Shown here piece after piece: positions 3,616 through 10,379 of a stretch of DNA of 64,000 nt. The position numbers and the translations under genes are program-made. Origin of the DNA: Macrostomum lignano (Eukaryota); assembly GCA_002269645.1 (NCBI GenBank), contig NIVC01001776.1:275990-339989 (forward strand). The letters are read 5' to 3'. Each line of letters starts with the position of its first letter. Within the stretch, counting starts at the first letter, position 1. The notes below the pieces were generated by a model, which made no database searches, had not been told where the DNA came from, and worked only from the letters and a program-made list of their open reading frames with translations.

Positions 3616-6600
3616 CGATCCGATAGCTCGGCGCTGGCGTCCCCCGCAGTTGCCGAGGTGACGCCGCCGCAAGCCGTCAGCCGCCAGCCGAGCCAATCAA
3701 CGCTGCCGCCGCCGCTGGAATCGCCTTGACAACCACCGTTGCCACCGTTGCCATAGAGACAGTTGGCAACGGGCCCGGTTAGGCGGAGTTTGGATCGATT
3801 GGCCGACAAGCCGAGCCGGGACAGGGCGGCGTTCAGCTTGCGGAGGAGCCTAGCGGTGGCAGCTGGCCGGGTGCCGGCCAGGAGGTAATCGTCTGCGTAC
3901 CTGGGATAAGGATCAGGTGTGGGATTGGAGATGGCATACATGGTAAGTTTACGAGATAGCTTTTTAGAGTGTTACATTGGATGTTCAGAGCGAGACAAGT
4001 GTGAGATAGGATCTACGCGTGGAATGGGATATAGATGTGGGACGGAATCTAGGTGAGGAATGGGATCTAATGTAGGTGTCTACTGTAGGTGTGAGATGGG
4101 ATCTTCTCTAGGAGTGAGATGGGATCTACTGTAGGTGTGAGATGGGATCTGCTCTAGGAGTGAGATGGGATCTACTGTAGGTGTGAGATGGGATCTTTTC
4201 TAGGAGTGAGATGGGATCTGCTCTAGGTGTGGGATGGGATCTGCTCTAGAAGTGAGATGGGATCTGCTCTAGAAGTGAGATTGGATCTGCTCTAGGAGTG
4301 AGATGGGATCTACTGTAGGTGTGAGATGGGATCTGCTCTAGGAGTGAGATGGGATCTACTGTAGGTGTGAGATGGGATCTTTTCTAGGAGTGAGATGGGA
4401 TCTGCTCTAGGTGTGGGATGGGATCTGCTCTAGAAGTGAGATGGGATCTGCTCTAGAAGTGAGATTGGATCTGCTCTAGGAGTGAGATGGGATCTACTGT
4501 AGGTGTGAGATGGGACTCAGGTGTGAGATGGGACTCAGGTGTGAGATGGGACTCAGGTGTGAGATGGGACTCAGGTGTAAGATGGGACTCAGGTGTGAGA
4601 TGGGACTCAGGTGTGAGATGGGACTCAGGTGTGAGATGGGACTCAGGTGTGAGATGGGACTCAGGTATGAGATGGGACTCAGGTATGAGATGGGACTCAG
4701 GTGTGAGATGGGACTCAGGTGTGAGATGGGACTCAGGTGTGAGATGGGACTCAGGTGTGAGATGGGACTCAGGTGTGAGATGGGACTCAGGTATGAGATG
4801 GGACTCAGGTATGAGATGGGACTCAGGTGTGAGATGGGACTCAGGTGTGGTATGGAAGACAGCTGAATCCCCACCGCAGCAGCAGGAGTTCGTCCGGTCG
4901 CCGACGCCCAGTTTCATTCTGAGGCGCTCCTCCATCATCGCCGAGATCTCCAGCTTCCAACGAGTCAGTCAGCGTCAGGTAGCCGCGCTCGCAGCTGGCC
5001 AAGTACAGGTGGCACAGCAGCGGCGACACGGAGGCGCCCTGCGGCAGGCCCCTGGTCAGCTGGTAGAACCTGTCGCCAACTCGCAGGTGAACTCCGCTGG
5101 CCTGAATAACTGGCTCTGATTCCTCCTCCGGCCGGTGCAGCATTCGTTCAAGCAGCTGACGGGCTCTTTCCACCATCGCCAGAGTCGTCGGCTGCACCGG
5201 TGCGGCAGTGGCGTCGGCGTCGGCGGCTTCGTTGAAGACAGTCAGCAGGCGGCGATGATCGATGGAGTCGAAGCAGCGACTCACGTCCAGGCGGATCAGG
5301 CTGAAGCCTCCGGCTGCGAGGCGGGGGCAGCGCGGTTGGGGGCGGATTTGAGGGCGGATTTAGGGGCGGATTTGAGAGCGGATATAAGGGCAGATTTGAG
5401 GGCGGATTTAGGGGCGAATTTAGAGGTGGATTTAGGGGCGGATTTAGAGGCGGATTTAGGGGCGGATTTAGGAGCGGACTTAAGGGCGGATTTGAGGGCG
5501 GATTAAGGGGTGGATTTAGTGGCGGATTTAGGGGCAGATCTAGGGGCGGATTTGAGGGTGGATTAAGCAATGGATTTAGGGGCAGATCTGGGGGCGGATT
5601 TGGGGCCAGATTTAGGGGCGGACATAGGGGTGGATTTTGAGGGCATATCTAGGGGCGGATTTAGGGGCGGATTTAGATGGCGGATTTCGGGGCGGATTTA
5701 AGGGCAGATGTGGGGCAGATTGAGAGGCGGATTTAAGAGCGGATTTGGAGGCGGATTTAAGGGCGGATTTGAGGGTGGATTAAGCAATGGATTTAGGGGC
5801 AGATCTGGGGGCGGATTTGGGGCCAGATTTAGGGGCGGACTTAGGGGTGGATTTGAGGGCGTATTTAGGGGCGGATTTAGGGGCGGATTTTGGGGCGGAT
5901 TTAAGGGCAGATGTGGGGCGGATTGAGAGGCGGATTTAAGAGCGGATTTTGAGGCGGATTTAAGGGCAGATGTGGGGCGGATTGAGAGGCGGATTTAAGA
6001 GCGGATTTTGAGGCGGATTTAAGGGCGGATTTAGAGGCGGATTGGGGGGCCGATTTCGGGTCAAATTTAGGGGCGGATTTGAGGGTGAATTTGGAGGTGG
6101 ATTTAGGGGCGAATTTCGGGGCGGAGTTCGGGTGGGTTTTTTGTTAAGAGTAGATTAAAACTGCTTTTCACCCTCCATCGCAGCGTCCCGATGCCGTTGA
6201 AAAAAATCCAACAGCCGGCGCAGCATCGACTGTCGCGACCGACGCGGCGGGCACAGGCGCCGCAGGACGTTCAGCAGGTCGCTCAAGCGCCGGTTCAACG
6301 AGCCGCAGCGCAGCAGGGCGCCGGCCGCGGGCACAGCGGCGGGGAAGACGCAGAGAGGCCGGAAACTGCCACTTCCGGTGGAGTCGGACTGCTTTGGGAC
6401 AAGCCGCAGGTGGCCCAGTCCCAGATAGGCGCCATCTAGTAAGCGCCGCACTGGAGTTGGCTGGCGCGCCAGTACGCCTCGGCGATGCAAATCGGCTAGC
6501 GCGCTTTTTAGGGCGCCGTACCAGGCGCGCTTGCGATAATAGAGGCAATCGCCGGTGGAGCCTGGAGAAGATGTGGTAGCGTGGAACAGGCTGCGCAGGG

Positions 6601-8276: not shown

Positions 8277-10379
8277 TCAAGTGACCAGCAGGTCGCTCAG
8301 TCGCCCACCGCAGTCCGCCAACAGTTGGCGCGCCTCGGAGACGCTCAGCTCGGGTCGGCGAAGCAGCAGCACCGCTCCAGCCACCGGGGACACCGTCTTA
8401 GACGACATCTGTCCAGCGGGTGGTTCGCCGAACCTCGTCAGAGCGGCGCGAGCTTCGGTCAGTCCCACGCCAGCTGCGGAAGCGACAAGCCGAGCCGCTC
8501 TGTCGGCCAACTTGCTGTTGGAGGGCTGCAGGCAGACCATGCGATTGCCGAACGTCTTGCCGGCTCGAACGAAACCACCCGTTGATAGGCGATTAAGCGT
8601 CAGCTTGGTTGCTATGACACCGGCATAGTCTAGCCAGAGTGGATCGTTTGGTAGCCAGGAGAGATCCAAAGTCAGATCGGCATTGTAGACGATAGCGCTG
8701 AGCTGGTTGCTAGGCAACCGTAAGGCTACGCTGCGGCTGACTCGGGCTGGAATGTCTAATCGGAGAGTTGGACTTGTCAGAGCAAAGCCGATAGCGTCCG
8801 TAGCAACTGCCTTCTCAGTATTCACCGGTTCAGCTAACGTTTCGGCTTCCTTAGCAACCATAGCTGCGTCTCTAGCAACCAATGGAATAGCGGCCAGAAA
8901 CTCTTCAACGTGACTGTCGCCAATTGCGCGAACGTCGCCGGCCGAGGCGCCGAAAGTTGGCGGACACTCGGAGGCGTCGATGGCGGCCATGGCGGAGCTG
9001 AGGGCATTGTCGAAAGCGTAGACAACGCCGTCACCATTGACGCCGACACTGTCGCCAAAGTGCGCCATCCAGTCGTTCAAAACTGCGCCGCCTTCTTTCA
9101 CAGATTCCAACAGCCGGTCCAGCAGGTCCAAATGCTCAGAAATCGATAGCCAGCCCCTAGCAACCGAGTGATCAGCTGACGGCTCGAGATTAGCCAGCAT
9201 TCTGCCGACAGCGTGGAACAGCAGGATCAAAGTCGCCGTGCCGCCTTTCATCCGACTCGAACCTGCGATCGCCTCGGCCTGCGCGGATGCGGATGTACTA
9301 ATCAAATGTACTTTTATTTTTTGAAGGCGCACGAACAAAACTAGACAAAAGTACGATTGTAGGCAGGACGAAATTCTAAATTTTGTACTTTACATGTGTA
9401 CTTTTATAAACCATAGCATAAGTGCGCACGCGCCCTTTATATAGAAGCATTAGATATTTGATATTTAAAGGGACATTTGAATGACAAAATTTTACTTGTA
9501 GGACCCTCGTAACATTAAGTTTAGATGCACTTTTTATAAGCTACTTTTTATGGTCTTTCATGAGTCAGTATAAACCCATTAAAAGTGAATTTTCAGATAA
9601 AGGTGCCTATTCAAAAGTGCAAATGTACGCTAAGGCGTAATCTCACTTGCGTTCAAACTTGAGTACACCTTGCACTTTTTAAGTACTTTTAATAATCTTT
9701 CCCTCACACCAATAGACGGATTAATTAGCAATCCCCGGTCGACATTGTCGGCCTCCGCCAGTCGTTTAGCAACCGCGCGACACCCGCCCGGCCAGGGCAG
9801 TCCGTCGACTCGATCGGCGCGCACGTCGCCAACTTGGTTGAAGCCGATCAGAGCGGGATAGGCGCCCAGGTCTGGCCGGCCGAGGCACAAGCCGACCTGG
9901 CCGAGCACGAACGGGGCGGACAGGCCGCAGCTGACACCGACTAGAAGCGATTTGCTGCTTTTGTCCTTGTTCCCTAGCAACGCAAGCAATTCCGCGACGC
10001 CCTCTCCTGCGGCGTCCTCGGCCGGTTCGACCGACGCGGCGAAAGCCGACCGACCGCCGGCCAGGCACGGCCGAAATGCGGCCGGCAATTGACGCAGTCG
10101 AAGTTGCCGATTGGCCACGGCGCAGCACAAAGTCGCCAGCCGGCCGCTGGTGCCGCAGCCGGACAGGACGACAACGCCATCGGAAGCGACAGTGTCGGCC
10201 ATAACGCCGGCCAGCCGGTCGAGCTGGACATCCAACAGGACAGCCTGTTGGCGCAAGTCGGCCAGCAGCAGCTGATCGACCTGGTGCAGCAGTCCGGCCG
10301 GGTCCGGGCTGCGATCGATGTCGGTAGTCAGCGGGTTGGACCGCTCCGTCTCCGGCAGGCTAAACTCGGACAATTCCTG
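8277..10379 (-). CDS. GCKR: glucokinase regulatory protein homologue (double SIS, MurQ-like); first coding exon not located
   Basis: Exons ~10379-9708 and 9278-8277 join in phase 0 (NPSIG|AEAIAGSSRMKGGTAT). Motifs match GKRP/MurQ: PETERSNPLTTDID, VVLSGCGTSGR, VEPAED, GVSCGLSAPFVLGQ, IGFN, DASECPPTFG, GKTFGNRMVCLQPSNSKLADRA. Confidence 0.87.

What the first reader, a model, noticed from the sequence alone, without database searches (positions are those of the whole stretch)
4875..8277. TEN-less TERT with a shortened insertion-in-fingers
Seen: the first ATG (7681) opens directly into TRBD/QFP-like sequence, and only ~600 bp of AT-rich DNA separates it from the GCKR stop (8277), so there is no room for a TEN exon. 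The motif A Asp to motif B' Gln spacing is 82 aa. Known: that spacing is 121 aa in human TERT (D712-Q833) and 57 aa in TEN-less Tribolium TERT (D251-Q308), and TEN and the IFD/TRAP module function together. Inference: this is a minimal telomerase with coordinated TEN and TRAP reduction, possibly needing another anchor/processivity factor.
Basis: partly seen in the sequence, partly recalled or inferred. Interest (0 to 1): 0.75.

Follow-up and report, generated by a model that had tools for sequence, protein, structure and literature searches.

The report
Flatworm telomerase lacking TEN and TRAP
This is the front three-quarters of the telomerase catalytic-subunit gene of the flatworm Macrostomum, and it does lack the N-terminal TEN domain and the TRAP insert, but that reduced layout is shared by other flatworms and already known from beetles and moths, so it is a new example of a known kind.

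Summary
A four-exon TERT gene lies on the minus strand: 7681-7203, 6701-6172, 5313-4875 and 3900-3616. Its only in-frame ATG is at 7681, 595 bp of 34% GC DNA downstream of the GCKR stop codon (8279-8277). The motif A Asp346 to motif B' Gln428 spacing is 82.

The window is Macrostomum lignano or a very close relative.

- **No TEN:** a TEN profile and tblastn find nothing anywhere in the 64 kb. The predicted N-terminus is an all-helical TRBD.
- **No TRAP:** in the AlphaFold model the IFD is a bare two-helix hairpin with no TRAP sheet.
- **Flatworm-wide trait:** cloned planarian TERTs have a spacing of 64-65 and trematode models 65. Macrostomum's 82 is that baseline plus a 17-residue, low-confidence acidic loop.

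Absence of the TEN (GQ) motif in flatworms is published. So is combined TEN and TRAP loss in Tribolium and Spodoptera, along with the missing-accessory-factor idea. "Coordinated" loss is too strong, because the short-N-terminus Aplysia model and the bee, ant, sawfly and aphid TERTs (reported to lack the TEN motif) keep 104-111 residues.

The C-terminal thumb lies outside the window, beyond a decayed Ty3/Gypsy-like element.

The parts
7203..7681 (-). TERT exon 1 (residues 1-159 plus two bases of the next codon): the N-terminal half of the RNA-binding domain (TRBD), including a QFP-like block ([14 protein letters not shown]) and a run of nine arginines
   Evidence: ORF, GT donor and 62% GC. All helical in the model. 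Aligns to the planarian and trematode N-termini and, as a profile, to TRBD crystal structures.
6172..6701 (-). TERT exon 2 (residues 160-337): the end of the TRBD with motif T (F199...LYYRKRAW220, about 6521-6586), then motifs 1 and 2 (LRLVPK, FRPL)
   Evidence: AG/GT splice sites. Pfam Telomerase_RBD matches residues 164-230. Tetrahymena TERT aligns to residues 181-366.
4875..5313 (-). TERT exon 3 (residues 337-483): motif A (Asp346 at 5287-5285), the IFD, and motif B' (Gln428 at 5041-5039)
   Evidence: D346, G425, Q428 and G429 are invariant in the 105-sequence alignment.
5090..5257 (-). Coding sequence of the reduced insertion-in-fingers (residues 356-411): two helices (356-373, 378-395) and a loop, with no TRAP
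   Evidence: AlphaFold2 secondary structure with block pLDDT of 80-95 over the helices. Spacing is 82 against a median of 122 in 146 TERTs.
5090..5140 (-). Macrostomum-specific 17-residue acidic loop ([17 protein letters not shown], residues 395-411) that accounts for 82 rather than the 64-65 of other flatworms
   Evidence: It is an insertion relative to two planarian and two trematode TERTs. Block pLDDT falls to about 59 at residues 401-410.
3616..3900 (-). TERT exon 4 (residues 483-577): motif C (D486 and D487 at 3893-3888), motif D (K520) and motif E (WLGWRL).
   Evidence: D486, D487 and K520 are invariant.
7682..8276 (-). GCKR-TERT intergenic region: presumed promoter and 5'UTR, with no coding potential
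   Evidence: 595 bp at 34% GC, stops in all frames. No TEN match.
8277..9338 (-). Last exon of the upstream GCKR-like gene (stop codon at 8279-8277), which bounds the space available for TERT 5' exons
   Evidence: Pfam GKRP domains. Best database hit is a Macrostomum lignano protein at 91% identity; its other part is almost identical to the upstream GCKR ORF at 9630-10466.
1..3615 (-). Start of TERT intron 4: a (GUCU)n array at 3336-3611, then a frame-broken Ty3/Gypsy-like gag-pol element (gag ATG at 3087) that runs off the window. The TERT thumb exons must lie beyond it
   Evidence: TRF. RVT_1, RT_RNaseH_2 and a PNMA-like gag. No CTE match in the window.
3901..7202 (-). Introns 1-3 (7202-6702, 6171-5314, 4874-3901), each mostly filled by tandem repeats: (CAGA)n, a 12-mer, and 18- and 23/46-mers
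   Evidence: TRF. Canonical GT-AG splice sites.

Best explanation
The locus is the TERT gene of Macrostomum (lignano or a near relative), cut at its 3' side by the end of the window.

**What the protein is.** It begins directly with the RNA-binding domain and has no TEN domain. Its fingers insertion is only a helical hairpin (IFD-a and IFD-c) without the TRAP module. It keeps every catalytic element:
- motif T;
- R274 of motif 2;
- the Asp triad D346, D486 and D487;
- Q428 of motif B';
- K520 of motif D.

It is therefore most likely an active telomerase catalytic subunit.

**How it probably works (inferred, not shown).** It would work like the Tribolium and Spodoptera enzymes: a TRBD-RT-CTE ring copies the RNA template. 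The DNA retention and telomere recruitment that TEN-TRAP-TPP1 provides in vertebrates and ciliates must come from something else.

**Where the layout comes from.** It is a trait of flatworms as a group, not of this gene. Macrostomum added low-complexity loops to the flatworm baseline:
- the 17-residue acidic loop in the IFD;
- a run of nine arginines in the TRBD;
- Gly/Asn- and Asp/Gly-rich inserts.
For: - **Gene model:** four exons with GT-AG sites and an intact frame.
- **TERT identity:**
- **Taxon:** the neighbouring GCKR gene matches M. lignano UniRef A0A1I8ICF9 at 91% over the query and almost perfectly over the upstream ORF.
- **No TEN:** 595 bp of 34% GC DNA with no ORF. The TEN HMM and tblastn are negative across the 64 kb. 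The N-terminal ~200 residues are helical, and positions 12-182 of the flatworm profile match the TRBD-only structures 2r4g and 5c9h. The T-motif Trp sits at residue 220. It sits at residue 183 or later in a D. japonica cDNA that may be 5'-incomplete, at 178 in the Dicrocoelium model and at 222 in the Aplysia model.
- **No TRAP:** helices 356-373 and 378-395 are separated by four residues, with high confidence. The spacing of 82 is below the 5th percentile (94) of 146 TERTs, whose median is 122. Planarians have 64-65 and trematodes 65.
- **Catalytic residues:** invariant in the alignments and equivalent to tcTERT D251, D343, D344 and Q308.
[quoted passage not shown] Tribolium and Spodoptera TERT lack TEN and TRAP yet are active (PMC11892584). 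Deleting human IFD-TRAP (residues 735-799) leaves single-repeat addition (PMC10055720).
Against: - There is no transcript evidence for the 5' end in this species.
- TEN is poorly conserved, so sequence searches could miss a very divergent one.
- The CTE is not visible, and a retroelement sits in the next intron, so an intact full-length gene is not shown.
- No ortholog above 50% identity exists in the 1.84-billion-protein library (best hit 34% identity), so purifying selection could not be measured.
- The structure is a prediction (mean pLDDT 77.7), and the first ~60 residues are low confidence.
- M. lignano is, to my knowledge, a recent polyploid, so other TERT copies may exist.
Confidence: 0.8

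Rival explanations
1. The gene model is incomplete at its 5' end. A TEN-coding exon would lie further upstream (with GCKR nested in a long first intron), or TEN would be a separate polypeptide encoded elsewhere and assembled in trans.
For: TEN is weakly conserved, so the negative searches are not proof. From my own knowledge, Macrostomum trans-splices many mRNAs, so 5' ends are hard to read from DNA. Human TEN can complement a TERT lacking TEN in trans (PMC10055720).
Against: No TEN-like signal appears anywhere in the 64 kb. A same-strand gene sits immediately upstream. Only 35 in-frame codons precede the ATG before a stop. Planarian TERT cDNAs cloned with 5' RACE have N-termini of similar length that align to this one. 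The TRAP partner of TEN is also gone.
Confidence: 0.07
2. This is a decaying or non-canonical TERT copy in a polyploid genome, disrupted by the retroelement after exon 4. The working telomerase would be encoded elsewhere.
For: A frame-broken Ty3/Gypsy-like element starts about 300 bp after exon 4 and no thumb exon is visible. The protein carries several low-complexity insertions. No TERT for this species turned up in the protein collection.
Against: All four exons are open with canonical splice sites. Every catalytic and motif residue that is invariant across TERTs is kept. Repeat-filled introns are the rule across this window. The element is on the intron side of a good GT donor.
Confidence: 0.1
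3. It is not telomerase but another cellular or transposon-derived reverse transcriptase, for example a Penelope-like element.
For: Identity to any known TERT is low (at most 34%). Single-sequence matches to solved TERT structures are weak: 1.4e-6 to Tetrahymena TERT, and none to human or Tribolium TERT.
Against: The telomerase-specific motif T and a Telomerase_RBD match are present. The flatworm profile hits Tetrahymena TERT at 1e-29, human at 1e-18, and TRBD-only crystal structures. The top 18 fold matches are all TERT, and LINE-1, group II intron and R2 reverse transcriptases score far lower. It is a single-copy, multi-exon gene in the window.
Confidence: 0.01

Closest known systems
Planarian TERTs (Dugesia japonica, Procerodes plebeja, Schmidtea mediterranea; Lai et al. 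2017, PMC5405514) and the trematode TERT models (Dicrocoelium CAH8514128.1, Paragonimus KAF8561157.1)
   Same: Same phylum and the same layout. The N-terminus starts in the TRBD with no GQ/TEN. The motif A sequence is of the same type (CF/Y-x-S/Q-I/L-D/R-H) and the IFD is short, 64-65 residues from Asp to Gln. These were the only short-IFD TERTs among the best 150 hits, setting aside a Mortierella-like fungal model (P0056, spacing 91) and an unnamed fragment (P0100, 87).
   Different: Identity is only 17-26% in the five-sequence flatworm alignment. Macrostomum carries an extra 17-residue acidic loop in the IFD, a ~34-residue Arg/Glu-rich insert in the TRBD, and Gly/Asn- and Asp/Gly-rich inserts between B' and C and between D and E. 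Its thumb is not visible here.
Tribolium castaneum TERT (PDB 3DU5/3DU6/3KYL) and Spodoptera frugiperda TERT: the 'miniature' insect telomerases
   Same: No TEN and no TRAP. The IFD is reduced to a helical hairpin, with a spacing of 57 in Tribolium and 69 in Lepidoptera. The catalytic residues are equivalent to D251, D343, D344 and Q308. The fold matches (Foldseek E-value 1e-11). The published hypothesis is that accessory proteins replace TEN-TRAP.
   Different: Different phylum. The reduction is probably independent, because Aplysia, Hymenoptera and aphids keep 104-111 residues. RNA-independent activity is shown for the insect enzymes and is untested here.
Human and Tetrahymena TERT (PDB 7QXA, 7BG9, 6D6V, 7LMA)
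   Same: The TRBD-RT core, all RT motifs and motif T are shared. These are the best fold and profile matches.
   Different: They have a ~200-residue TEN domain plus linker, and a 65-residue IFD-TRAP (human residues 735-799) that binds TEN and TPP1 and is needed for repeat-addition processivity. Both are absent here.

Membership tests
Telomerase reverse transcriptase (TERT) | Telomerase-specific RNA-binding domain with motif T immediately upstream of the RT domain | tested here: met
   Pfam Telomerase_RBD at 6.8e-6, above its cut-off. The sequence F199...LYYRKRAW220 is present, with F199 and W220 nearly invariant. The flatworm profile matches the TRBD-only structures 2r4g and 5c9h.
Telomerase reverse transcriptase (TERT) | RT motifs 1, 2, A, B', C, D and E with the catalytic Asp triad, the motif B' Gln and the motif D Lys | tested here: met
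   R259, P262, K263, R274, D346, Q428, D486, D487, K520 and G554 fall in invariant or nearly invariant columns. RVT_1 matches at 5e-14.
Telomerase reverse transcriptase (TERT) | Overall fold closest to solved TERT structures rather than to other reverse transcriptases | tested here: met
   Foldseek ranks 1-18 are all TERT (E-values 1e-14 to 6e-9). LINE-1, group II intron and R2 reverse transcriptases follow at 1e-7 or weaker.
Telomerase reverse transcriptase (TERT) | C-terminal extension (thumb) closing the TERT ring | not testable with these tools
   The gene runs off the window after exon 4. No CTE match was found in the window.
Telomerase reverse transcriptase (TERT) | Templated telomere-repeat synthesis with an integral RNA | not testable with these tools
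   This needs biochemistry. No telomerase RNA or any other Rfam family was found in the window.
Canonical four-domain TERT (vertebrate, ciliate, yeast type) | N-terminal TEN domain (GQ motif) | tested here: not met
   No upstream ORF. TEN HMM best E-value 1.7 and tblastn best 0.09 over the 64 kb. The model's N-terminus is all helical.
Canonical four-domain TERT (vertebrate, ciliate, yeast type) | TRAP module inside the IFD (about 65 residues, with a beta sheet) | tested here: not met
   Four residues separate the two IFD helices and there are no strands before residue 412. The spacing is 82 against a median of 122.
Reduced TEN-less and TRAP-less TERT (Tribolium and Spodoptera type) | Absence of both TEN and TRAP with an intact catalytic core | tested here: met
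   See the rows above. For comparison, Tribolium has a spacing of 57 and Lepidoptera 69.
Reduced TEN-less and TRAP-less TERT (Tribolium and Spodoptera type) | Compact total size (about 600-700 residues) and activity without the usual RNA domains | not testable with these tools
   577 residues are visible up to motif E and the thumb is missing. Planarian and trematode relatives are about 570-674 residues. Activity was not assayed.

The most novel reading that the evidence does not exclude
Flatworms as a whole (macrostomids, planarians and flukes) lost the TRAP module on their own. This would have happened after an older loss of TEN and independently of beetles and moths. Yet planarians and Macrostomum maintain telomeres in long-lived, continually dividing stem cells. 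If so, these animals must have a different way to hold the DNA and to bring telomerase to chromosome ends. That could be an unknown accessory protein, possibly docking on lineage-specific inserts such as the acidic IFD loop (residues 395-411) or the arginine run in the TRBD. Macrostomum, a transgenic laboratory model, would be a good place to find it.
Probability: 0.3. Interest if true: 0.5.

Novelty: new member of a known kind. Interest (0 to 1): 0.3.

Why it matters
TEN and TRAP together are what make vertebrate and ciliate telomerase processive and recruitable by TPP1. Enzymes that lack both show that telomere maintenance can be organised differently.

The useful additions here are modest:
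- a near-complete gene model for TERT in a regenerating laboratory flatworm, for which only a partial sequence had been used in the comparative study found (PMC5405514);
- the point that a short IFD is common to all flatworm TERTs sampled (64-82 residues);
- the point that the Aplysia model and the insect TERTs from TEN-motif-lacking groups still keep a long IFD, which separates the two losses in time.

None of this overturns current views. The accessory-factor idea is already in print for insects.

Tried and rejected
- **Word-indexed protein search, TERT alone and as a three-sequence flatworm alignment:** no hits, not even the alignment's own members. Low-complexity words (the Arg run and Gly/Asn runs) may have filled the 8000-candidate list; I did not test this. 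I relied on the exhaustive HMMER search instead.
- **N-terminal length among database hits as a proxy for TEN loss:** rejected. Many short hits are truncated models or isoforms from fungi, plants and diatoms.
- **Regex motif spotting:** it mis-picked motif A in some proteins. I replaced it with alignment columns.
- **Fetching the homologous M. lignano contig through the GCKR protein:** not on record.
- **Rfam scan of the window:** nothing found.
- **The idea that 82 residues means a half-size TRAP:** rejected. The extra residues lie after the second IFD helix, are Macrostomum-specific and are low confidence.
- **The idea that the CCAAT-like and CACGTG motifs inside the first 40 codons mean the true start is downstream:** set aside. 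There is no other in-frame ATG, and this stretch aligns weakly with the planarian N-terminus.
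Full report
**What is in the sequence**

Read on the minus strand, the region holds a GC-rich multi-exon gene whose introns are packed with tandem repeats. Joining 7681-7203, 6701-6172, 5313-4875 and 3900-3616 at canonical GT-AG sites gives one open frame of 577 residues. It contains:
- motif T (LYYRKRAW);
- motifs 1 and 2 (LRLVPK, FRPL);
- motif A (RLD346VSRCFDSID);
- motif B' (LPQ428GASVSP);
- motif C (YAD486D487YLL);
- motif D (K520);
- motif E (WLGWRL).

After exon 4 comes a GT donor, a (GUCU)n array and a frame-broken Ty3/Gypsy-like gag-pol element that runs off the window. 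No thumb (CTE) sequence is present anywhere in the window, so the gene is seen only up to motif E.

**Checking the observation**

- The ATG at 7681 is the only in-frame ATG of exon 1. Upstream, the frame stays open for 35 codons and then hits a stop.
- The upstream same-strand gene is GCKR-like and ends with TGA at 8279-8277.
- The 595 bp between them is 34% GC, against 62-68% GC in the TERT exons, with stops in every frame.
- Asp346 to Gln428 is 82 residues.
In the published alignment of Lai et al. the same count gives 121 for human and 57 for Tribolium. D251 and Q308 are the Tribolium residues named in PMC7274783.

**Identity and organism**

Pfam reports RVT_1 and Telomerase_RBD. The best solved relative by sequence is Tetrahymena TERT.

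An exhaustive HMMER search of 1.84 billion representatives gives 228 hits with E-value up to 0.001. The best is only 1.4e-13 at 34% identity, so no close ortholog is in that library. Nearly all of the best 150 carry the aligned TERT motif A Asp and motif B' Gln. One hit, P0112, is a bacterial-type reverse transcriptase.

The neighbouring GCKR gene matches a Macrostomum lignano UniRef entry at 91% identity. Over the upstream ORF the match is almost perfect. The window is therefore from M. lignano or a very close relative or homeolog.

A profile of this protein with two planarian and two trematode TERTs hits Tetrahymena TERT at 1e-29 and human TERT at 1e-18. It also hits TRBD-only crystal structures, with profile positions 12-182.

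An AlphaFold2 model built on 105 sequences has mean pLDDT 77.7 and pTM 0.78. Its top 18 Foldseek matches in the PDB are all TERTs.

**TEN**

Four lines of evidence agree that TEN is absent.
1. There is no room and no ORF upstream of the ATG.
2. A profile built from the N-termini of 70 TEN-bearing TERTs recovers 84 of the 150 retrieved TERTs, 70 of them its own training set. Its best hit among 1416 six-frame segments of the whole 64 kb has E-value 1.7. The best tblastn E-value is 0.09.
3. The model's first ~200 residues are all helical, as a TRBD is, rather than the mixed alpha/beta fold of TEN. Confidence is low for residues 1-60.
4. The T-motif Trp is at residue 220. It is at residue 183 or later in a D. 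japonica cDNA that may be 5'-incomplete (the species set was cloned with 5' and 3' RACE), at 178 in the Dicrocoelium model and at 222 in the Aplysia model. In TEN-bearing TERTs it lies at roughly 450-740.

Lai et al. 2017 had already reported two relevant points. Arthropods and lophotrochozoans, including triclad planarians, lack the GQ (TEN) motif. Protostome N-termini are also generally truncated. They used a partial M. lignano sequence.

**IFD and TRAP**

Across 146 TERTs with both residues aligned, the Asp-to-Gln spacing has a median of 122 and a 5th percentile of 94. This protein has 82. Among the best 150 hits, the only TERTs with a shorter spacing are trematode models at 65.

Translating planarian cDNAs from the Lai et al. 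supplement gives 64 (D. japonica) and 65 (P. plebeja). In a five-flatworm alignment the Macrostomum excess is one block of 17 residues ([17 protein letters not shown], 395-411) after the second IFD helix.

In the model, the motif A helix continues as IFD-a (356-373). Four residues later comes IFD-c (378-395), then this low-confidence loop, then the hairpin (412-415, 418-422) that leads into motif B'. TRAP should sit between the two helices, and nothing is there.

Human TRAP is residues 735-799, which is 65 residues. Subtracting that from 121 gives 56, close to Tribolium's 57 and the flatworm 64-65.

**Is the loss "coordinated"?**

Not as a rule. All of the following come from groups reported to lack the TEN (GQ) motif.

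| TERT | Asp-to-Gln spacing |
|---|---|
| Tribolium | 57 |
| Lepidoptera | 69 |
| Ant, bees, sawfly | 104-111 |
| Aphid | 110 |
| Aplysia (mollusc) | 104 |

The Aplysia N-terminus is as short as the one here. The shortening of the IFD therefore looks like a later event specific to flatworms, and separately to beetles and moths, rather than an automatic consequence of losing TEN. One caveat applies: the Aplysia and some insect sequences are genome predictions.

**Mechanism**

Shown: the catalytic core is complete. The Asp triad, Q428, R274 and K520 are all present.

Inferred: the enzyme is an active telomerase whose ring does the chemistry, as in Tribolium and Spodoptera TERT, which are active without TEN and TRAP. 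In human telomerase, removing TEN or IFD-TRAP leaves single-repeat addition and loss of TPP1 stimulation. Flatworm telomerase therefore either works with low processivity or uses other partners. The same hypothesis is already published for insects. Nothing here tests it.

**Rivals**

- A missed 5' exon or a trans-acting TEN: about 0.07.
- A decaying copy broken by the retroelement: about 0.1.
- A non-telomerase reverse transcriptase: about 0.01.

The evidence for and against each is given in the Rival explanations section. The main gaps are the lack of transcript data for the 5' end and the missing thumb.

**Verdict**

It overstates coupling between the two losses and is not new in kind. This is a new, divergent member of the known class of reduced TERTs, and it shows that the reduced IFD is common to all flatworm TERTs sampled. 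Interest is about 0.3.

Noticed in passing
window 6783-7147 and 3336-3611: Intron 1 carries (CAGA)n, about 91 units, and intron 4 carries the exact complement (GUCU)n, about 69 units, on the pre-mRNA. The two arrays could pair over more than 250 nt and loop out exons 2-4, which hold the whole RT core. Pairing of that kind favours exon skipping or circular RNA. The same microsatellite also occurs elsewhere in the window (for example around 26200-26640), so this may be coincidence.
   Followed up: partly
window 7587-7596 and 8265-8274: The palindrome GTCACGTGAC, an E-box core, occurs only twice in the 64 kb. One copy is 3 nt after the GCKR stop codon and the other is inside TERT codons 29-32. 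The 8-mer count is not significant: 15 of 100 shuffles give two or more. CCAAT/ATTGG boxes and ATCGATCGAT also lie within the first 40 TERT codons.
   Followed up: partly
window 1-3300, minus strand: A Ty3/Gypsy-like retroelement has a PNMA-like gag, CCHC knuckles, protease, RVT_1, RNase H and the start of an integrase. Several frameshifts and stops break it. It is in the same orientation as TERT and is cut by the window edge.
   Followed up: partly
window 7203-7681, 4875-5313 and 3616-3900 (TERT residues about 136-165, 459-476 and 531-548): Relative to other flatworm TERTs, this one has low-complexity inserts: a run of nine arginines with Glu/Gln/Asn, an Asp/Gly-rich stretch between motifs B' and C, and a Gly/Asn-rich stretch between D and E. 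All are low confidence in the model. They look like slippage products in a genome full of tandem repeats.
   Followed up: partly
window 54278-55141 and 58256-59065, plus strand: Two tandem paralogous single-exon ORFs of 287 and 269 aa each have a signal-anchor-like start and many cysteines. They are almost identical over the first ~180 residues and have no Pfam match for either copy. Each is followed by a tandem-repeat block.
   Followed up: no
window 41713-43281, minus strand: A 522-aa intact ORF in an AT-rich region has no Pfam match. It may be a domesticated or mobile-element protein.
   Followed up: no
window 17000-19250 and 44000-46000: Two stretches of about 2 kb have extreme strand asymmetry (GC skew up to 0.84, AT skew up to 0.69). 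On the opposite strand they read as long Ser/Leu-rich ORFs. They look like copies of one repeat family.
   Followed up: no
window 26000-32238, 33149-33730 and 11835-15722: Other genes in the window: an amiloride-sensitive sodium channel (ASC) exon, a DUF4615 protein, and a C2H2 zinc-finger exon (11835-12323) next to a zinc-finger-like ORF with no Pfam match (13941-15722), separated by minisatellites.
   Followed up: no
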